Positions 45,001-56,800 of a DNA stretch of 64,000 nt are shown here, piece after piece. Both the position numbers and the translations under genes were made by a program. Source of the DNA: Trichoplax adhaerens (lineage: Eukaryota > Animalia > Placozoa); the NCBI RefSeq assembly GCF_000150275.1, contig NW_002060944.1:5150123-5214122 (forward strand), read 5' to 3'. The number at the start of each line of letters is the position of its first letter. Position 1 is the first letter of the stretch. The notes under the pieces are model-generated. The model saw only the letters and a list, made by a program, of their open reading frames with translations, had not been told where the DNA came from and did no database searches.

Positions 45001-46332
45001 GATTCCTTAAAGCGACTCTTTAGCGATAAGACAACATGGGCAGCTACACCTGAGGTAAATCTTAAGCCAGTTTACTCTTTATACTACTCCAGCTTAAATT
45101 AAAATATCCAATTCAATATTGGTATCAGCTATATATTCGGTGTAATGAAGCATTAGTATTTAGCTTATAGCTAATTAGAATACTTTATCTATTCAAAGGA
45201 ACTTAAAATTAGGCCTATAGAAGCAGTCTCCTCTAATCAGCTTGCAACTAGTAAGGAAGGAACTGAAGAGCAAGAGGATAAAACTGCACAGACTGATCAA
45301 CCACAATTGGAAAAGCAGGATGAAGGTTTGAAAGATTCAGCTTTATCTCAAGAAGAAGTTGATACTCCACCAGAAGAAGTTCAAGGTGAAAATATGGAAC
45401 AAAATCAGGAAGAAAAACCCCCCAAAATACCTGAAAGCGCTGAAACGAATCGAGAAGAAGAAGAAAAGAGTCAAGAAGCAGTTAAAGAAGATGATACTGT
45501 AAATGAAGTGAATAACGACGTTACTGATAGCATAGATTCTACCAATAAAATCGATGAAAAACCTGTAGAAGAGACCCAAGATCAAATAGAAGAAGATGAT
45601 ACGGTAAAGGAGACAAAGCCACAAGGTGAAGAAATAGTAGTTGTTGCCGATGATGAAAATATCCGAACCAGAAATTTAACAGCCCTTGAACAATCGGTAA
45701 TTCGACATTGATCTTACAGTGTAGCAGAATTTATATCTGTTTCCCTATTTCATGATCTAAGATCATCAATTTTTCCTATGTCCCATAGATTCGAAGAACT
45801 GGTACACCAGGACAACATTCAGGTTTGTATTGATTATATTAAGATAGACATTAATTCGTAATCATATATCCTCAAAACATATGATAAAGTACTGTATTAA
45901 GTGCTCTCTATAATTTAGTCTTAATTACTCTTCGCCATCTTAGACTTATGATATGCTGCAAATATGCAACGTGTCCTTCTTTACTATACTATCAAATTAT
46001 TAATCAATCCCTTTATATTATAAACAGCTATCTCTCTACCAAGCTCTGATACTATTGAAGCAAGTAATAATCTCAAGGCATTACAGCCGCTAAACCAACA
46101 TTTATTAGAAACAGAACTTCGTGCTCAAGAGGCTGAAGATCGAGCGATTAAGGCTGAATTTTCATTGAAGGAAGCACTAAATAAGATTATAACATTGGAA
46201 AGGCAATTACAAGAGCAAGAGCAAAAGCAAAAGCATGAACCTAAAAGTGACAGCAATAAAGTAGGGATGTCACATCGAAAAGTTGGAGCATCTAACACAA
46301 AGAGCCGCTCCAATCCACAAAAAGCTATTTAA
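39003..46332 (+). CDS. AXDND1: Axonemal dynein light chain domain-containing protein 1, more than 20 exons
   Basis: Spliced translation includes KFKHLAEKPTCTCGAG.GLTFLYD, LIPLEYHII, KYTT...VFPS, [27 protein letters not shown] (Ax_dynein_light domain), EYHQLYELQRRRLE and EREIWSNCAYSLSLKV. It has a Glu-rich exon at about 45199-45696 and a stop at 46330-46332. Confidence 0.9.
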
Positions 46333-48562
46333 ATAGTGGGTGCAAAGTGATGCCGAGCTGAATGAAATTCTAAAACTAACTGCCCTAAGTACAATAATCA
46401 ATCCATAGGACTACTGCGATGGCTAACCTTACCTATTGATTTTATTACTGAATCATGGATTTAATCGATCTTCTTGCAAGGGTTAATATTTTTCATGGTA
46501 TTTTATCAATTTGAGGTTTCAAGTTGGAAGCCTGAGGTTTCTGAGTTATTGACGATTTGAAGAAGATCTATTGAATATTTTATAGTCATATATTTTATTT
46601 CGATATACTAAGTTATAAATACAGATGACGTTTGTACTAATCATAATTGACTATAGCATTTCAACTGGATAAATCGACTATCAATCATATACCATAGATC
46701 GTAATTACTACGAATCCTTGATCATTGCTTTTACAATCATTTTTAAATGCCCTGCAATGACAGTTTCAGATGATTTGCTTTAAACTACTGGTTACGCAGC
46801 GATGGCATCTATTGCAGCATATAATTAATTGAGTCCACTATGGTATCTTATTCTAGTTACTCATTAATTATAGCATGTCAATTAAGTAAATGTGTATATT
46901 TCATCTTATACGGTACTAATTCCTCATTTAAGCTACATCATGTATTATTGTATTCTAACAAATTCATGTTTACATCATTATTATCGGATATCAGATTCTA
47001 TAAATTTATGTAATTAAGAAATAGATTGTGTAAATATCTGCTATTATCACTCTTTCTGTACAATGTACTTTATCATTGACTTACTGCAATTCTACTAAAA
47101 TAGCGAAGTTATAGGTTAGCTTACTTGAATTTAGAAGCTATCTATTGACTGATAATGAATGATAAAATTCGATGGATAGCCTTATCATTGTTAACCATCA
47201 AATCGAAGGAAATCTTTGAAAGTTATATACAATAATTCTTGTGTATAAATATACCAAAGAGTAATTTCTAATAACTAGCTGGTGCACTTTTCTCTACATG
47301 TTGCTACTACTAATTAAGTCAGACAGTACCTAGATATTATATTAAAATTACTGGTTGAGTGCATTATCGTATCTCATGATTTTGTTATTCTTATAGTGAG
47401 TACGACCGTGACAATAATTATATTTTAAGGCATATATCAAGTAAGATGCAATCAATTACGCCTTGATGGATACCATCAGAGTTCAATTTAAGATTTAAAA
47501 TGTATATATTGACTATTAGATATGTATCGACTGCAATGATTGCAAATAATTACCCATTTATTTTCAATTAGTGATTAAATTATGCAGGATTTCATACCAT
47601 TGAATAAAATGACCATTTATTTTGCCCTTTATGATGCTATTAGTAATACTGCTAGTATAATTCTAGAAAATGATATAGCTAGCGAAAGCACTTTTAAAAA
47701 TTTTTTGAGGATTTATTAATTTTTTACTCTATTTCTCAAGTTGACTTTAACTTCATTGTCAAATATTTCCTAATTCAAAGGATCAAATGTCAATCTGATA
47801 CCTTAGCTACGAGATCATAAAACAAAGTAACCATATTAGGAATTGTTAATTAATCGATTAGCCAATTGCAAATAGTTCCTAATTAATTTTCAATTCAAAA
47901 GTAAGCTCCACAATTAGTAAGACCATTTGTTATTACTTTACCACTAGGTTGTTTGGATGTTCTGAAATGGCATTTAGAATTCCATAAAACTATATATAAT
48001 GGAACAAGCCTGATGTTATAATAGAGAGGCAAAAAATTGGACTGATGATGATTTATTTCTATAACTAATCATGTTTGTATTGCTATTAAACTCCAGACTA
48101 ACCTGCTGTGAATAGGAAAAGATAAACAAATAATGGTAAAATATAACCGGACTAGCAGTTATCAAACTGTTATAATGAAATGATGATTTACCGGTGAATT
48201 GAAATTTCGATAACGGGGAAGTGGAGGTATAAAAATAAAGTATTTGATCGATTAATTAACATTTTTTCAATATGGTTCTGTGCTACTTCATGAAAAGTAT
48301 GTAGCTTATACAATCGATCGAAAGTACGGTATAGAGGTTAAAATAAATTGAAAGTAAGCGAAACAAGAGCGTACTGAAAGCTTGATAATTAGCTTAGCTT
48401 TTGTTATTTATTTCCACGAAGGACAAGATATGAGCAATGTATGATTTAATTGACTATAATCAAGTTATCAAATTAAGATAGATAATATCGCGTATTGTTG
48501 ACAAAATCTACGTCAAAAGTATGGCGTAGTCTTCCAGTTGGACGAATCTTCAAACCATGGTA

Positions 48563-51500
48563 TTAGCTTTCTTGACATCTTGAACCGAAAATGATTGGAA
48601 TTTGTTTGTCCAGGTTATCAGCAATTGTTTTTGCTAAAAAATATTCAGGATCATTATAGCAAACACTTTTATATGACTTGACACAAGCTAGGAATGTCCG
48701 AATAATGTGGCAATATTGCCCTGGTGTGACGACTTTTTTGGAATCCGTTTGATATTCTTTAATACATAGTTTAACATTACATCTTCTTTTGGTAAGATAG
48801 GCTGTAGAAATTAAGTAAATTCATCAGCAATGAACTATTAGCTAAAAGTAAAATCTGTCTAGATAATATTCGGATATTGATAGGAAAGCATAAAGTTGTT
48901 AGGTTACAAAAAATTGTAGCAATTCTATTATGTCAAATTGTATTAACTTTGATGTTTTAGAACAAAAGTACAGATTATAGTACAAGAGTAATAAACATTA
49001 TTTAATAAATGCCTTTTAAAGTCTCTGCCTTTTTCATTGTATCATACTCGTAGATACGATCAATTTACTCTTTCAATTTACTAATGTTGATCTCAAAATT
49101 ATGGTCTAGACGCGCAAATTTTTACTTAAAGTATTTAATATTCTAAGATTCTAGAATATATTAGCAGGAGAAGATGAAAATCTTTCATTTACTTTACTTT
49201 CTCCAAATGAAATCGGAATTATTTGCAGTGTTAGCTAATAAGTGGAACATGAAAGGTATAACTTACCATCTGGGATACTTAGTTTGGTACACTTGCTAAA
49301 TTTTTCTTTCATTGTAGGCAAATTGTAGCAATCCAAAGGCAATAGCTGATTATTGAAACCAGGATCGGCCTTCAGTGAATCAAATTGAGCCTTGCATAAT
49401 CGATAATCACTCATTAAAGCTTGACATTCTTCTTTACATATCAACCGTTTGTAATTAACTCCTGCACATGGCGCGAAGTTATGATAGCAAATAGCTTTCA
49501 ATGCATATTCTTCGCAATGACCACCAATAGCACGTATAAATGCGAAAGTTTCCGATAATTTTTGCTCCAAATCCTCCTGATTACCAAATGCTGATGTTTC
49601 TGTTTTATTGACACCATAAAAGGGTGCACAAACTGAGCCAGAATAAAGTTCACAACTCGAACGTATTAAGGAGTTTGAATAATCGTTCTTTTTATCATGC
49701 AGGGTAAATTTAGTAATGTCAAATCTAGGTAGATTTTGTAACATTAGCGTTAGCTGGAGAGTATTGTTTAATAGCGTACGTATAAGTACAAATAGAGATT
49801 CAAGTTGAATATAATCAGATAATCTTGCTTATTACCTTGCAAGTGGATCCGTAAATAGCTGAGCTAAAAATGAACGAAAGGCATGGTAAAGGAAGAAAAA
49901 TTGTGGTGAATATGTTAGCTAGTTTAGCGGTAGTAGCAACTTTGCAGTTTTAAAAAAACTTATCGAATGTGCACTAATGTTAGTGTGAAACATTATAATT
50001 TCTCGTAACATATGTTTACTACACTAAATTGTATTGATTTCATGGTAATTCGTGAGCAATAAATCGAAATTATGTAATAAACAGTGAAACGGCAGAAGAA
50101 ACTAAACATTACGATATTAGAGAGTTGATCTATCTCGAGTAGTGATTAGATTTATTCCCAGATTAGGATCTAGTAAGGTATTTCAAATTTTGCTTAACAA
50201 TGGAAATAGTTTCAAAGTATTGTATTATGATTCATCAAACTTTTACATTTTCGTATTAAAAATAGCATTAAGCCATTGCCGCAAATCATCGCAGGAAAAA
50301 AATTAACCTATTATCAAGGTCTACGTTGTGCTTTAATTACAATATTCGCGTAATTTCGCTAATTTTACAGACATATAGAAAGATAATGGCATGAATCTGA
50401 GCTTATTGAGGATAGCTTGATGAGCGTAAAGATAAATTTTTACTGACGTTCGCAAGATCGCTTCCTGTAGTTGATTGTATCGATTGAGATTTTGGAAGAT
50501 TTCGCCTTTCCTCGGAAGCTTTCAAATATGATCTGTATGGAAATGTAAGAAATAAAATATAGATTTCGGTAGACAGATGGCGATAAATGAATAACTCATT
50601 TATCGCTTATCGCTTAGTTAAAGTTATCTTAAATTGAGCTAACTCAATATTCAACGATAATTAATTATTAATGTCTTCAGAAAATTCATCATCAGCTTTC
50701 TTTTTACCTTATAATTGATATTAGATTCAATTTGAATTTGAGCAAACTTCCAGTGTTGGCCCTGATCGCCTTTTTTATCCCACAGTTTTACCAGTTTGCC
50801 ACCGGATGGTCGTATGTAAACGCGAAGTCCTGACGATTCATCGGTTGACTCCATATGGTACCAAAATTGGAGACAGATTGGAAATTTTTGAGGTAGAACT
50901 TTGCTAACTAGTCTTGCCCTAGTACGATACTCCTTTGCATAAGTCGTATCTGTCCTGATATGGAAGTCTAAATAAAAAGAACGAAATATAATACCAGTAT
51001 TAGCATTGCAAACGATAATTGTGGTATGTATCTGTGTTAATCGCAAGCTAATAAATTTTGCTGTACCTCTTTTACCAATTATGGGAAATCCTGAATTTTC
51101 CTTCGATGTTTGAGGTAGTTTAACACGCTTCCAGTTAAAGTCATTATTGGCACCATTTCTCCATCGACAATACGATGATTCAAAAGTGCATTTGATATTG
51201 TAAGAAACTAATGATTTATAAACATGGCATAAGATAAAATCAGTTCAAACTGCAGACGAAAAGATGCAATTCATATTCAAATCAAAACTGATGTAATTTG
51301 AAAATGGTATGGTATGGCTATCAATTTATTATGCTTTACATAGGTAAGAAAGAAGGCTATAAGTAATTTCCTAATAGCAAAGTTGTAAGAGTTGTATCAA
51401 TTATTAAATTTCTACAGCTTTATAGGTGAAGAAAATTAAGTATTCTTCCTGTCAATTTAAATATTACCAGTAATTCCGATAGGTTAATTACCTACAAATA

Positions 51501-53823
51501 GCCTATATTTTACTAGATGACAATTAAAATGATCTATGGCATTTGGAAATCTTTGGCATTTGATTTTTAAGTTGATAAAGTATAATTAAGAAAGGTACTA
51601 TAAGGTGTAAAAGATGGCGAAGATTCCTGCAGCTTAATTCGAACGCTTTAAATCGTATTTTACTCTAATACGATATTAATCAAGGTCAAAGATTGGATAT
51701 GATCCGTGATTGAAATTTTAAAAGGAACAGACAGATGTAACGATATGGCGAGAATTTTATATTGGATTTATGCAGTATAGATACAATAGAAATATGAAAC
51801 TTAAAAAAATTTTTTGGTATTTTGACACTGAGGCCGTTGAACGGCATACTGTAGGTTAAAATTCTGTTAGCAGACTTAAATCCAAAACAGTATAAGAAGA
51901 AACGGCATTTTGATGACAATTTGTAAATTAATTAAAATAGATAGAAAATTGTTGGTAGATCCAATTCAGCACAACTAAATAAATCTTTTAATTACGGTAA
52001 GCATTGCGATAACTCTTTTATTGTTGCAGCCTTATACGCCTTTGGCACTTTTAATAACACCAAGTAGATTCAAATTAACGTTGCTAGAAATACTTGCTAC
52101 TAGTGAAATAGCGATTATTGTATCAAGATGTAGAATACTTGGATTATTAATATTGCAGCGGTTGTAAGGCTTGATTTCGAGTTAATTATATTAGCTCTTT
52201 TAGCCGTAGTGATTCAAATATATGGGTAAATTATCAAGTTTCAGGTGAGTTAATCTATTTCTAATGATATTCACAGGAGGCAATGTTAAGAAATACTTTT
52301 ACCTAAATGCAGCTGGTTACTTCTATCATATAGTATAGAAGTGAATATGAAATGAATACTTTTCCTTAAGAGCTAAATGTAAAAACTCACTTAAGCTATA
52401 GCCAAGGCGTTTAGCTTTTTCTTTTCCGCCTAAATCTTGTAAGATGTCGGCAAATTTGGAATATTCTAGCAAGTTGTATTTGATATTAGCTAATCTACAT
52501 GCGAATGTTGTACCTTAATATCGGCACTTGATCTTAAGTATGCAGATTCTAACCTTTACATTTGCTTACCTGATGAGCTAGGATTGTCATCTTTAGACAG
52601 AGTTATCGATTTCATTAGGAAAGATGATATAATCATACGGATAAAGAGCATGCAAATATTACATTGTTACAATGAGGATTAAATTTTTTATGTACAATAT
52701 CTATAAAGATAGTAAGGAAAATTGATGTACCCTATGTAAATACCGAAATTTGTTGACTAGGTATTAGTTTTTGTCGAATTATAATTATAATTGGTTAAAG
52801 ATATCTTTCATTAATACTTTAACTATAATCCACTACGATCTATCAATATTGCCCAAAACCTACAGTCTAATTCATTCAATTCATTAATTTCATCCAACAG
52901 ATCTTCATCGACGTAGATGGGATTTTCCTCTACAAATAACGGTGTCGTTAGTAGTTGTTCATAGTCGCTATTTTTTTATAACATTTAAACTTTTACAACC
53001 GTATTTCTAAAAAAACGTATTTAGTTAGAGTTCTCACAGTATCACCTTAAAATATTTAGTTAACACTAATCCTATTATCCTCGCTATTTGTCAGTTGCCC
53101 TCAAGTTATGTTACTAAGATTCTGAAGGTTAGTGCAGTAGTATACAAGAAATATGAGCTATAATATATTGTAAATAGAGTTTTTGTGTCGCTGCATATAA
53201 ATTAATGATAAAATCTTAAATTTGTCGCTTTCCGGTAATTTAAATCAGCTAGGATTAATACGGTCACCGTCTACCTATGATTAATAGGGTAATAATTATT
53301 GGCAAATTTCTTTATGATTCATGGTATAATAGTGGATATTAAATAGTGGTAAACTTATAATTAATTATTTACATATTAGATTAGGTATTCTATCGATATA
53401 GCCATGCTTACGAGTAAAAGATGATGCAATAATAAAAATATATTAGTCCTGTTAAAACTATTTTAATGTCGCTTTGATCAGATTTTACGTATAAAAATCG
53501 TGATCAATGAGCACAGTTGTGCCTTTAGCAGTGCATTAGTAATTTATTTTTACCGTAGATAGGTAAATGCCTATAATATAGATTGTACTAAAATTGGCTA
53601 CATTCAAGGAAAGTAGTACAAAAATGTAAAGTGATTGTATTTTATTCGATGGTATTAGAATTTAAAATATAGTATGCCATAGACCGCTTTATTTAGTACG
53701 ATAAAATTTAAATTTACCTGGAATAGCAACCGAGTTGCCGTTCATTAAGCCAATATTGTCTGGTGCTTGTTGTGCTTGTGCAACAGCCAACCAGGTAATA
53801 ATAAAGATGAAAAGTAGCTTCAT
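48563..53823 (-). CDS. Secreted protein, about 480 aa: signal peptide, acidic propeptide, MAM, ROR-type Frizzled CRD, RGM-N-like six-Cys domain
   Basis: Ten exons (53718-53823, 52864-52929, 52570-52590, 52391-52429, 51067-51207, 50708-50967, 50448-50532, 49836-49863, 49267-49724, 48563-48801; 1443 nt) join in frame with GT-AG introns. Signal: MKLLFIFIITWLAVAQA. MAM: CTFESSYCRW...CLQFWYHM...LWDKKGDQGQHWK...IIFE...IDTI. CRD with 10 Cys: CELYSGSVC...CYHNFAPC...ICKEEC...CTKLSIP. Tail: CNVKLCIKEY...YCHIIRTFLACVKSYKSVCYNDPEYFLA...C. Confidence 0.85.
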
Positions 53824-56800
53824 GTTGATTTTAATGACTTGGCTGCTCGATTTTCAGCAAGTCAATCACAGTTAAGTACTAGTATATTAGTAAGAATTCT
53901 AAAATTAATTAAATGTACAATAACTATATGAAAGATAAGAGTAATATATTAATTCAAGCAGACCTGAATGTGGATGTTTTATTGTACTTTAAACGAAGAG
54001 ATTACTAGTAATCCTTCTAGTACAGACTGAAATAACGCTTCGAATACAGTTCATGAAATTAATGACGACTTATGTATAGTTTTTATAAGTTTTGACATTG
54101 TTATGCTTAACTTCTATGTCATGCTGATATCTTGTATATGATAAATAAATCATGACCATCATATTATTTATTCTAATGGGGAATAAAGTGGCCACAATTG
54201 AAATGACTATTGCATTCAACTAGAACTAATATAGCTTTAATAATTAATGTTCTTATTGTAAATTCTATATGTAAATAATTACAGCCTATCTACAACAATG
54301 TTGTGATGAATATTTGGATAAATTAATCTTTGTACTGTCCAAATTTAAACAGGTTTTGTCCGAGTTGATTAATTAGTCAGCACTGCTTACCAGGATGCCG
54401 CGTTGAAAAATTTTTTTAAAATCACCGGATTTACCTCTTAATTGGTTAAAGCAAACGTGATAACATACTTTACATTGCCCGAATTTTTCTCAAAATCCTG
54501 CATGTGCCGTATGCAAGAGAAAACCCTATTTAATGAGAAAAAATCTTCACATTTCGCTGCGGATAATTTCTTATGGTGATAAAAAATTGCATGAAAATGC
54601 CGATATGCTAATTGTAATATGTTTACGCGACATTCATTTCAAATGCAGCAGCGAATAAACGTATGTATTTCTTGAAGACTTGAATAATATTCATCGCCGT
54701 AGAAAGTCTCAGGATGGAAATCTCTACATCCTTGTTGATAAAATTTTGAATGGATAAAGGAAGAAATAGAGCCGATATTGTCATGTAATAGTTGGCTGTG
54801 GTGTGATATTTTGTAATTCTTCGGCTAATGTCATGTGATTTAAGGCATATCCTACCGAGCTATAAGCAATCATTGGCTGGTTAAAGTTTAGACAAGATTC
54901 CGACTGGATCGATTGGTCATAACAATGTGCTATTCTCAAATAAAGGTAACGATATACAAGGAACCAATGAGCTCAATCTTTATATACATACTGTAGCATA
55001 GGATGCGACTGGTATCACTGCAGTTAATAAACCTTTGAATCATAGGCATGGTATAATTGGGTTCTTTGTAATATATTGAGATTGGGGGTAATAATTTGCA
55101 TACAGGCAATACGATTCGTGTAATATAATAAATTTGTAATACAAATAGTGAAATCTATACCAGAATAGATTAAACAAAAAGATGGAGTCAGCGTTATTAC
55201 TAGTCTATTAATAACTAAATGCAAAGGATCGAATTGATTTAATTTAAGGCTAAATTAAGGTAAAATAACACACAAAATTCTAACTCATGTTGAAGTAATT
55301 TATTTTGATTATACATCGTTTTACGTAAGTCGACGTATATATCAATGCTAAATATTGTTATATCGATAGGAATCGCGGCCTTGTAAAGATAGTAGTTGTT
55401 ATTCTAGTGATTATTCTAGTGTAAATATACATTAGTTGAATTCATCATTGTTACAGATCGTTGTTAGCAAATCAGATTTGGATTATTCCCAACCTTCGAT
55501 TTGACTTTCTTGCTGCCAACAAATCCATGTCCTCATCGAAACATTGAGATAATTTCTTCACTTTGTGCTGGAGTCGCTCACATATCAAATAGTAATAACT
55601 GTAAAAATTTGTGTAAGGAATCATTTCTTCAATGATAGCGACAATCGTAACCGAAAATATCGACATGTTATTTAATATCGTCATCATAAAAGACTTTAAT
55701 ATATACGTATACTAAAATAAATACCGATGTTTTCGATGTTTTACGAGAGACAATTTCTCGATCGCTACTATATTAGATAATAGACAACCTAGAAATGAAA
55801 CTTATTTTGAATATCTTGCACATGATCAAAGTGCTAATAACTGTTAGCTGTCCATTACTTATCGGATCTACATCCAGCTACGTGCTATTCTAAGCATAGA
55901 CTGCATCAATGATAGTGAGAGAATTAGAAAGCATGTAGTATCTCATTATGAATTGTGATTTTGAAATTGGAAAGTTTACCATAACTATAGTGCTCTCCTC
56001 TAAGGTTTGTCATGTACCATAATATGATAAAAATAATGCGCTCGAAATCACAACGTCGCGTTAGGTAGACGTAATGGATAAGACTTTTTTAAATTTCTAG
56101 TCACATTAGTTGTGGTTACCACTTGATCATAGGTATACACTCTGCTAATATCTATATATTATGGAGCTTAAATATTGATCAAATTAATCTTAGCAATTAG
56201 TATAATCCATGATGGCTCTACCATCAGCTGCTAAACTCTCTTATTTCAAGGAATCCCTACAAATCGTATACTATGATTTACAATATTTCATGATGAAAGC
56301 ACATTAAAAGCACCTATTAGGAGAGTTTCAAATAATTTTTACCATGCATTATACTATAAATTTCGAGTACAATAATTACATATGGTACGTAGACATGCTA
56401 GAAATTTTATACAGGAGTTTAAAAAGTTTGCGAACTTAGCACGACATCGATAGTTTATACAGTACTTTGAAAATATTGTGTTAAACTTTTTTCAAAAAAT
56501 ATTGTTTTTTTAATCACATAATACTCAAAATATGATTTTTATTACGCCATCGTAGAACCAGTTTAATAGTTGAATAATTAAAATTGTGTAAAAGGGTAAG
56601 ATTAACTTTGCTTAAAGGTCAATTAATGATGTCATAAGATGTTTTAAAATTTTTACATTAGGATAGAGTAGATAGGGATGTGGATGTAAATGCATTTATG
56701 TAGGTTTGAAAGTGTGAGATATACAAATTAATTATTGCAGCACACCCAATATAGCAGACAGGTGGTTATGCGTAAGAAATTGTAAACTTTGCATAGAACG

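What the first reader, a model, noticed from the sequence alone, without database searches (positions are those of the whole stretch)
48563..53823. Secreted MAM + ROR-type CRD + RGM-N protein: candidate soluble dual Wnt/BMP ligand trap
Seen: ten in-frame exons, seven of them absent from the ORF track, give a signal peptide, MAM domain, 10-Cys CRD and a terminal six-Cys domain, then a stop with no TM, kinase or GPI signal. Known: Frizzled/ROR CRDs bind Wnts; sFRPs are CRD+NTR; the RGM/hemojuvelin N-terminal helical domain binds BMPs; MAM domains mediate adhesion or oligomerisation. Inference: an sFRP-like decoy with a BMP-binding module in place of NTR could couple Wnt and BMP signalling extracellularly in a basal animal. 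I know of no described protein with this architecture.
Basis: partly seen in the sequence, partly recalled or inferred. Interest (0 to 1): 0.9.

Follow-up and report, generated by a model that had tools for sequence, protein, structure and literature searches.

The report
Secreted MAM–ROR-CRD–RGM-N protein of Trichoplax
This is a real, expressed Trichoplax gene for a 492-residue secreted protein that joins a MAM domain, a ROR-type Wnt-receptor domain and an RGM-type BMP-binding fold in an order seen nowhere else, but whether it binds Wnt or BMP is still untested.

Summary
Spliced RNA contigs from four studies give exactly ten coding exons on the minus strand (ATG 53823, stop 48565-48563), all GT..AG, reading 492 aa in one frame. 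There is a signal peptide but no TM helix, GPI tail, kinase or kringle. All three domain calls are supported. MAM scores 111 bits. The CRD matches ROR2-like kinases (E 4e-19) and its best solved folds are ROR2, MuSK and Nrk. The six-Cys tail scores 23.7-25.8 bits against RGM_N, around the cut-off of 24.2. Its AlphaFold model (pLDDT 84) has RGMA/B/C N-domains as its top 12 Foldseek hits and its only two VIA hits with Z of 8 or more. A deeply diverged placozoan keeps the MAM, CRD and tail exons and the stop, with dN/dS 0.06-0.08. The gene is already public and uncharacterised: TRIADDRAFT_53504 is a mis-spliced 430-aa model, and Trichoplax sp. H2 has a correct 492-aa model under a misleading name. 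The dual Wnt/BMP trap idea rests only on analogy. ROR-type CRDs lack the Wnt-lipid pocket. The RGM residues that contact BMP (Gly, Leu, His) appear replaced, in the least conserved stretch of the tail. A complex prediction gave no verdict. This is a new domain arrangement of known modules, apparently placozoan-specific.

The parts
53964..54000 (-). 5' UTR exon. Its upstream limit was not determined because it runs past the stretch laid.
   Evidence: The joint 53878->53964 (skips 85, GT..AG) is seen in 3 runs.
53718..53878 (-). Exon 1. It holds the 5'UTR end, the ATG at 53823, and a signal peptide with a hydrophobic core followed by an A-Q-A motif.
   Evidence: The Kyte-Doolittle maximum lies at residues 1-22.
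52864..52929 (-). Exon 2, an acidic Tyr-containing linker. It is missing from the public model TRIADDRAFT_53504.
   Evidence: Joints; translation; comparison with P0001.
52570..52590 (-). Exon 3, a 21-nt micro-exon in the linker.
   Evidence: Joints 52465->52570 and 52590->52864 in 4 runs.
52391..52465 (-). Exon 4, the linker before MAM.
51067..51207 (-). Exon 5, the start of the MAM domain (first two MAM Cys).
   Evidence: Pfam MAM; joints.
50708..50967 (-). Exon 6, the MAM core.
   Evidence: Pfam MAM scores 111 bits over residues 96-250 of P0085; joints.
50448..50532 (-). Exon 7, the MAM C-terminal strand and fourth MAM Cys.
49836..49863 (-). Exon 8, a 28-nt micro-exon linking MAM to the CRD. 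It is missing from TRIADDRAFT_53504.
   Evidence: Joints 49724->49836 and 49863->50448 in 4 runs.
49267..49724 (-). Exon 9, the complete 10-Cys Frizzled-type CRD of the ROR/MuSK subtype.
   Evidence: Pfam Fz. phmmer gives E 4e-19 to an Actinia ROR2-like protein. The best folds are ROR2 9fse, MuSK 3hkl and Nrk 7me4.
48563..48801 (-). Coding part of the last exon: a six-Cys three-helix RGM-N-like domain followed by the TAA stop at 48565-48563.
   Evidence: The joint 49267->48801 is seen in all 4 runs. Pfam RGM_N scores 23.7-25.8 bits.
48100..48562 (-). 3' UTR. The contigs continue at least 320-460 nt beyond 48100, which could be a long UTR or overlap with the convergent neighbour.
   Evidence: table 8 (records 1, 8, 11).

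Best explanation
Shown, with confidence about 0.97: this is an expressed, selectively constrained gene of Trichoplax adhaerens, apparently restricted to placozoans. It encodes a 492-aa secreted protein made of a signal peptide, an acidic linker, a MAM domain, a ROR/MuSK-type Frizzled CRD and an RGM-N-type three-helix domain. It has no membrane anchor, kringle, kinase or RGM C-domain. Inferred, with confidence about 0.45 (the figure given in the confidence field): it acts outside the cell as a non-signalling binding protein for secreted morphogens. On this reading the MAM domain oligomerises it or tethers it to a surface, as MAM does in meprin, RPTPmu and neuropilin. The CRD would recognise a Wnt in the lipid-independent way proposed for ROR2 and Nrk. 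Alternatively or in addition, the C-terminal RGM-N fold would occupy the type-1-receptor epitope of a BMP-type ligand, as isolated RGM N-domains do. Because it cannot signal itself, the net effect would be competition with, or presentation to, the true receptors. Which ligand, if any, it binds has not been shown.
For: Splice model: there are 10 joints, all GT..AG, in contigs of 4 runs from 4 studies. The CRD exon always joins the tail exon, and the stop is read through into the UTR. The joined exons form one ORF of 492 aa, identical at 490 of 492 residues to Trichoplax sp. H2 protein P0085.
Domains: MAM scores 111 bits. Fz scores 26.6-30.8 bits here and 32.6 bits in the relative's CRD, against a GA of 32.1. 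RGM_N scores 25.8 bits for the H2 tail alone, against a GA of 24.2.
CRD: 84 hits in 1.84e9 representatives. The best non-placozoan hits are ROR2-like and ROR1-like kinases of a sea anemone and echinoderms. The best folds are ROR2 CRD-Kr (E 1.8e-6), MuSK and Nrk, with Frizzled CRDs at E 0.14 or worse.
Tail: the AF2 model has pLDDT 84. The top 12 of 350,542 PDB chains by Foldseek are all RGMA/B/C N-domains (TM 0.64-0.84). By VIA-align, RGMB (Z 9.2) and RGMC (Z 8.6) are the only hits with Z of 8 or more among 48,161 chains. An RGM cluster is the top ESM Atlas hit in two searches.
Constraint: dN/dS against a deeply diverged placozoan is 0.058 for the tail and 0.077 for the CRD. All six Cys and the stop are kept.
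Literature: the RGM N-domain alone binds GDF5/BMP2 at the type-1 receptor site, and soluble RGM fragments inhibit signalling (PMC7354924). The ROR2 CRD is necessary and sufficient to promote WNT5A signalling (PMC11219042). The genome has five TGF-beta ligands, including a BMP2/4-7-like one that keeps the W-x-D-W RGM/receptor epitope.
Against: There is no binding evidence of any kind. The complex prediction gave no verdict.
The Pfam scores for Fz and RGM_N straddle their cut-offs.
By cysteine register (inferred, not from a residue-level superposition), the RGMB contact residues Gly101, Leu103 and His106 correspond to Asn463, Pro465 and Phe468. In human RGMC, L101P and G99R/V abolish BMP2 binding (PMC7354924).
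Five of the 14 substitutions between the two placozoan tails fall in that 7-residue loop.
ROR2 and Nrk CRDs lack an exchangeable lipid pocket, and ROR2 acts together with Frizzled (PMC11219042; bioRxiv 10.1101/2021.04.29.442059), so a free ROR-type CRD need not sequester Wnt.
Three-helix bundles give many middling structural matches (note).
Confidence: 0.45

Rival explanations
1. One reading: one soluble molecule traps both Wnt and BMP at the same time, coupling the two gradients as an sFRP-like decoy with a BMP module in place of NTR.
For: Both candidate ligand-binding folds sit on one secreted chain and are equally constrained. Dual Wnt/BMP extracellular inhibitors exist with other folds, such as Apcdd1 (bioRxiv 10.1101/843714) and Sfrp5 (PMC3639276). 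Trichoplax lacks Dkk, WIF-1 and Cerberus (PMC13128682), which leaves room for lineage-specific regulators.
Against: This version needs both inferences to hold, and each is uncertain, for the reasons given above: non-conserved RGM contact residues, a variable loop, and a ROR-type CRD without a lipid pocket. Trichoplax already has a canonical sFRP (PMC13128682). No complex support was obtained (no verdict).
Confidence: 0.15
2. The protein binds neither Wnt nor BMP. It is an extracellular adhesion or matrix protein, or it binds other ligands, and the CRD and three-helix tail serve as generic disulfide-rich interaction modules.
For: MAM is by far the strongest domain signal and is typically adhesive or oligomerising (nearest Atlas clusters are MAM proteins). 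CRDs bind diverse ligands; the MuSK CRD and lipid- or sterol-binding CRDs are among the fold matches. The RGM contact residues are not conserved (inference from PMC7354924). The acidic Tyr-rich linker would suit matrix or charge interactions.
Against: The tail is the best RGM_N match in the whole genome. The only established role of that fold is BMP/GDF binding (PMC7354924). The CRD is specifically of the ROR type, and ROR CRDs are tied to Wnt5-class signalling.
Confidence: 0.3
3. The exon chain is an artefact: a chance chain of exons, a pseudogene, or two genes fused by the reader (a MAM-CRD gene plus a separate RGM-like gene).
For: The public T. adhaerens model differs from this one (430 aa). 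Seven exons are too short to appear as ORFs.
Against: Spliced contigs join every exon in 3-4 independent runs. They form one uninterrupted frame, and the same 492-aa protein is annotated in Trichoplax sp. H2. dN/dS is 0.06-0.08. There is no RGM_C anywhere near; it lies on another scaffold.
Confidence: 0.02

Closest known systems
ROR1/ROR2/Nrk and MuSK receptor tyrosine kinase ectodomains (Ig-CRD-Kringle)
   Same: The CRD is of this subtype. The best sequence hits are ROR-like kinases (28-38% identity, E down to 4e-19). The best solved folds are ROR2 9fse, MuSK 3hkl/9lgg and Nrk 7me4. It has ten Cys.
   Different: It has no Ig, kringle, TM helix or kinase. The position after the CRD, where RORs have a kringle, is taken by an RGM-N fold, and MAM precedes the CRD. 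The protein is soluble.
Repulsive guidance molecules RGMA/RGMB/RGMC (hemojuvelin), DRAG-1
   Same: The C-terminal 70 residues form a three-helix bundle with six Cys. They match Pfam RGM_N, and the solved RGM N-domains are the top structural hits. The central Cys spacing C-x8-C-x7-C and the N-terminal C-x4-C agree with RGMB as I recall its sequence from memory; this was not checked with a tool.
   Different: The domain sits at the C-terminus rather than after the signal peptide. There is no RGM_C/vWD domain, no GDPH autocleavage site and no GPI signal. The RGD/RGN loop and the Leu and His contact residues are not conserved (inferred). The last Cys is displaced by about 6 residues. Trichoplax has a separate canonical RGM gene on another scaffold.
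Secreted Frizzled-related proteins (CRD + NTR)
   Same: Both are secreted, non-signalling proteins built around a Frizzled-type CRD, so the decoy logic is plausible.
   Different: The CRD is ROR-type, not Frizzled-type. There is no NTR domain. MAM and an RGM-N module are added. Trichoplax has its own sFRP (PMC13128682).
Dual Wnt/BMP extracellular inhibitors (Cerberus, Apcdd1, Sfrp5/Sizzled class)
   Same: They share the proposed function: one secreted or surface protein acting on both pathways (bioRxiv 10.1101/843714; PMC3639276).
   Different: The folds are unrelated, and function here is only hypothesised.
MAM-domain extracellular proteins (MAMDC2, meprins, MDGA, neuropilin, ALK)
   Same: It has a canonical MAM domain with four Cys and a 111-bit score. 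These are the nearest ESM Atlas clusters by features.
   Different: None of those clusters combines MAM with Fz or RGM_N.

Membership tests
MAM domain proteins (PF00629) | Profile match above the curated cut-off over the full domain | tested here: met
   111.1 bits against a GA of 26.4, profile positions 1-157 of 158, residues 96-250. Exon-wise, 76.8 bits.
Frizzled-type CRD (PF01392) | Profile match above the curated cut-off | tested here: inconclusive
   26.6-30.8 bits for the window/H2 protein, below the GA of 32.1. The orthologous CRD of the diverged placozoan scores 32.6 bits and passes.
Frizzled-type CRD (PF01392) | Ten conserved cysteines, with significant sequence and fold similarity to known CRDs | tested here: met
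   Ten Cys at residues 285-406, nearly invariant in an alignment with 48 CRD relatives. phmmer E 4e-19 to ROR2-like. ROR2, MuSK and Nrk CRDs are the top PDB folds.
ROR receptor tyrosine kinases | Kringle domain, TM helix and tyrosine-kinase domain after the CRD | tested here: not met
   No Kringle or kinase Pfam hit. No TM helix. No kinase or kringle motif in the whole window. Transcripts end after the tail exon.
sFRP | C-terminal netrin-like (NTR) domain after the CRD | tested here: not met
   Pfam at E up to 1 finds only RGM_N in residues 410-492. The fold is a three-helix bundle, not NTR.
RGM family | RGM_N three-helix, three-disulfide domain | tested here: met
   Pfam RGM_N scores 25.8 bits (H2 tail) and 23.7 bits (window) against a GA of 24.2. 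Foldseek's top 12 are all RGM N-domains. VIA gives Z 9.2 and 8.6 as the top two. There are six Cys. The score is borderline by sequence but clear by fold.
RGM family | RGM_C (vWD-like) domain with GDPH autocleavage, which binds Neogenin | tested here: not met
   Absent from the protein and from the window. The genome's RGM_C lies on scaffold C1412.
RGM family | C-terminal GPI-anchor signal | tested here: not met
   The last 20 residues are hydrophilic (mean KD -0.2), and the protein ends 3 residues after the last Cys.
RGM family | BMP-contact residues of the alpha2-alpha3 loop and alpha3 helix (RGD/RGN Gly, Leu103, His106 of RGMB) | tested here: inconclusive
   By Cys register these are Asn463, Pro465 and Phe468, with the Tyr105 equivalent kept as Tyr467. 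The register is inferred from the aligned ranges and the residue numbers in PMC7354924; no residue-level superposition was available. The loop is variable between placozoans.
RGM family | Binding to BMP2/4/6/GDF5 | not testable with these tools
   Complex prediction gave no verdict. Biochemistry is needed.

The most novel reading that the evidence does not exclude
A placozoan-specific secreted protein, made by domain shuffling of a ROR-type CRD and an RGM N-domain behind a MAM oligomerisation module, binds a Wnt and a BMP-type ligand on one chain. It would thereby couple the Wnt (central-peripheral) and BMP (top-bottom) patterning systems of an animal that lacks Dkk, WIF-1 and Cerberus.
Probability: 0.15. 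Interest if true: 0.8.

Novelty: new variant of a known kind. Interest (0 to 1): 0.55.

Why it matters
The RGM N-domain has so far been known only at the N-terminus of GPI-anchored RGM co-receptors, and the ROR-type CRD only in receptor kinases and their kin. Here both are found on one soluble chain. They have been conserved under strong purifying selection across deeply split placozoan lineages. This shows that these ligand-recognition modules were shuffled early and independently of their receptors.

If either module keeps its ancestral ligand, the protein would be a lineage-specific extracellular regulator of Wnt and/or BMP signalling. Trichoplax has a reduced set of classical antagonists, and its body-axis signalling is only now being dissected (PMC13128682).

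The work also corrects the public T. adhaerens gene model. That model lacks two exons and the first CRD cysteine.

Tried and rejected
- Complex prediction with the tail (P0085:413-492) as partner and two copies of the mature Trichoplax BMP2/4-7-like ligand (L021:1459-1806) scored 0.00. That is no verdict, and I do not count it for or against binding.
- phmmer of the tail, and hmmsearch with the three-sequence tail profile, against PDB sequences found nothing at E up to 10. The RGM link rests on the Pfam profile and on fold.
- The search for homologous proteins with the whole protein and with the tail region found only the two Trichoplax entries. This tool depends on shared words and similar length, so the blank says little.
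- A search with the exon of the canonical Trichoplax RGM, meant to fetch RGM N-domains for a residue-level alignment, returned only placozoan fragments. The PDB alignment covered only the C-domain. The contact-residue correspondence therefore stays inferred.
- ESM Atlas by features gave no usable hit for the tail. For the whole protein it gave only MAM clusters below 0.9.
- There is no paralogue of the tail in the genome, and only one weak paralogue of the CRD.
- Earlier notes of the scan hold nothing here.
- No paper mentions TRIADDRAFT_53504.
- The joined exon model was built only inside scripts, to check frame, length, hydrophobicity and identity to P0085. Exon references and the database protein P0085 (490/492 identical) were used instead.
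Full report
**1. What is there**

The feature is a minus-strand gene. The genome holding the window is 105.6 Mb in 1414 contigs. The database protein that matches the locus is TRIADDRAFT_53504 of Trichoplax adhaerens.

I laid Logan contigs of four runs from four studies on window 48100-54000. One run is on record as RNA-Seq; for the other three, RNA is a guess. The contigs gave ten joints, each CT..AC on the + strand, which is GT..AG for the gene. Contigs that lack introns at canonical splice sites can only come from spliced RNA, so the gene is transcribed and processed.

The coding exons are 53823-53718, 52929-52864, 52590-52570, 52465-52391, 51207-51067, 50967-50708, 50532-50448, 49863-49836, 49724-49267 and 48801-48563. 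A 5'UTR exon lies upstream of 53964. The contigs run on at least 0.9 kb past the stop.

The CRD exon is joined to the tail exon in all four runs. No joint leads to any other exon.

**2. The protein**

Joined in a script, the exons give 1479 nt, which is 492 codons and one terminal stop.

- There are 20 cysteines, split 4 + 10 + 6.
- The only hydrophobic segment is the N-terminal signal peptide.
- The C-terminus is hydrophilic, so there is neither a TM helix nor a GPI signal.
- No kinase or kringle motif exists in any frame of the 64-kb window.
- The next ORFs downstream are on the opposite strand.

I searched exon by exon by reference. I then used database protein P0085 (Trichoplax sp. H2, 492 aa), which differs from the window's model at only two residues, H139Y and G441E.

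The public T. adhaerens model P0001 (430 aa) lacks exon 2, exon 8 and the first part of exon 9, including the first CRD cysteine. The RNA contigs contradict it.

**3. MAM domain**

Pfam MAM scores 111 bits over the whole profile, at residues 96-250.

**4. CRD**

Pfam Fz scores 26.6-30.8 bits, just under the cut-off of 32.1. The orthologous CRD of a diverged placozoan scores 32.6 bits and passes.

A full phmmer scan of 1.84 billion representatives gave 84 hits.

- After the two placozoan entries, the best hits are a sea-anemone ROR2-like kinase (E 4e-19), crinoid giant Ig/FN3/Fz proteins and echinoderm ROR1-like kinases.
- Of the 73 sequences scanned (72 further hits plus P0085 itself), 24 carry Kringle and 17 a tyrosine kinase domain; only P0085 carries MAM or RGM_N.
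- None of the other hits scanned carries MAM or RGM_N either, apart from P0001.

An AlphaFold model of the CRD plus tail (pLDDT 81) finds human ROR2 CRD-Kringle (9fse, E 1.8e-6), the MuSK CRD and Drosophila Nrk first. Frizzled CRDs come only at E 0.14 or worse. 'ROR-type CRD' is therefore correct.

**5. The tail**

Residues 421-489 carry six Cys with spacing 4-17-8-7-27.

Sequence evidence:

- Pfam RGM_N is the only family found at E up to 1. It scores 23.7 bits for the window and 25.8 bits for the H2 tail alone, against a cut-off of 24.2.
- It is the best RGM_N match in the whole genome.

Fold evidence:

- An AlphaFold model from the three available sequences has pLDDT 84 and is a three-helix bundle.
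- By Foldseek against 350,542 PDB chains, ranks 1-12 are all N-domains of RGMA, RGMB or RGMC from their BMP2/GDF5 complexes (TM 0.64-0.84, rmsd 1.2-2.8 A). The next family has TM 0.44.
- By VIA-align against 48,161 representatives, without Foldseek, RGMB (Z 9.2, 67 residues, 2.0 A) and RGMC (Z 8.6) are the only chains with Z of 8 or more. Generic helical bundles start at Z 7.1.
- Two ESM Atlas searches also put an RGM cluster first.

Helical bundles match promiscuously, and no single number here is decisive. The agreement of a profile hit, two aligners, two model sources and the cysteine pattern makes an RGM-N fold, and probably homology, the clear reading.

**6. What is missing**

There is no RGM_C domain, no GDPH site and no GPI signal. 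The genome's RGM_C lies on another scaffold, in a separate canonical RGM gene. This protein is therefore not an RGM, not a ROR and not an sFRP (it has no NTR). It is a new arrangement of their modules.

**7. Conservation**

Genomic contigs of a related placozoan (Logan SRR30664515-17; loci L014-L016) carry a MAM exon, the CRD exon (77% identical) and a tail exon (82% identical). All six Cys are kept, and the stop falls one codon later than in the window protein.

Synonymous sites are saturated (pS about 0.70). dN/dS is 0.058 for the tail and 0.077 for the CRD. The tail is thus at least as constrained as the CRD. It has no paralogue in the genome.

**8. Function**

Everything beyond the anatomy is inference.

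- The isolated RGM N-domain is sufficient for high-affinity GDF5/BMP2 binding at the type-1 receptor epitope, and soluble RGM fragments inhibit signalling (PMC7354924).
- Trichoplax has five TGF-beta ligands. One is BMP2/4-7-like and keeps the W-x-D-W epitope.
- Trichoplax lacks Dkk, WIF-1 and Cerberus (PMC13128682).

Against it:

- ROR2 and Nrk CRDs have no accessible lipid pocket, and ROR2 works within a Frizzled super-complex (PMC11219042; bioRxiv 10.1101/2021.04.29.442059).
- By cysteine register, RGMB Gly101, Leu103 and His106 correspond to Asn463, Pro465 and Phe468. In human RGMC, G99R/V and L101P abolish BMP2 binding (PMC7354924).
- Five of the 14 differences between the two placozoan tails lie in that 7-residue loop, while helices 1-3 are almost invariant. 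The window was chosen post hoc, so the hypergeometric P of 0.0016 is only indicative.
- Trichoplax already has an sFRP (PMC13128682).

The residue register is my inference from the aligned ranges and the residue numbers in the paper. The RGMB cysteine spacing that I compare with is recalled from memory and was not checked with a tool.

**9. Verdict**

The gene is already in public databases, uncharacterised and in one case misnamed. I found no paper on it.

My estimates for function are:

| Reading | Probability |
|---|---|
| Secreted, probably MAM-oligomerised binder of at least one morphogen class | about 0.45 |
| Dual Wnt/BMP trap (a subset of the first) | about 0.15 |
| Different role, such as adhesion, matrix or another ligand | about 0.3 |

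This is a new variant: a new domain architecture built from known modules, apparently confined to placozoans within the limits of the collections I could search.

Noticed in passing
window 48563-53823 versus P0001 (TRIADDRAFT_53504): The public T. adhaerens gene model (430 aa) is mis-spliced. It omits exon 2 (52929-52864) and micro-exon 8 (49863-49836), and it uses an internal acceptor in exon 9, which deletes the first CRD cysteine. RNA contigs and the Trichoplax sp. H2 model (492 aa, misnamed 'MAM and LDL-receptor class A domain-containing protein 1' although it has no LDLa domain) support the longer form.
   Followed up: yes
G000:C1412:4976739-4981300 (L012, minus strand): This is the canonical Trichoplax RGM gene, with RGM_C at 69.9 and 32.4 bits. 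Its autocleavage motif reads G-S-W-H instead of G-D-P-H. Its N-terminal Cys-rich region has a different cysteine spacing and was not among the RGM_N candidates in the six-frame scan. The best RGM_N match in the genome is therefore not in the RGM gene.
   Followed up: partly
window 52391-52929 (exons 2-4), residues about 36-90: This is a strongly acidic linker with tyrosines in acidic contexts (for example I-Y-V-D-E-D and L-D-Y-D-N). They could be tyrosine-sulfation sites. No domain match was found.
   Followed up: no
window 48720 (and 48674, 48725, 53764, 53803, 53816): Runs labelled organism B and C carry the H2-type alleles (48720 C>T on the + strand gives G441E). A run labelled organism A matches the window. 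These look like strain differences, not editing.
   Followed up: partly
window 47640-48562: RNA contigs continue at least 0.9 kb past the stop codon. This is either an unusually long 3'UTR or overlap with the 3' end of the convergent plus-strand gene at about 42-46.4 kb. That gene has a long acidic ORF at 45307-45711.
   Followed up: no
G000:C1414:10945006-10949816: A tandem cluster of at least four Fz-type CRD exons on one strand. It contains the only detectable paralogue of this gene's CRD (29% identity).
   Followed up: no
G000:C1409:241694-241996 (L021) and four other loci: Five TGF-beta-family ligand genes, each with the mature domain in one open frame. The best has an RRKR furin site and is closest to BMP2/6/7 and GDF5 among solved structures.
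   Followed up: partly
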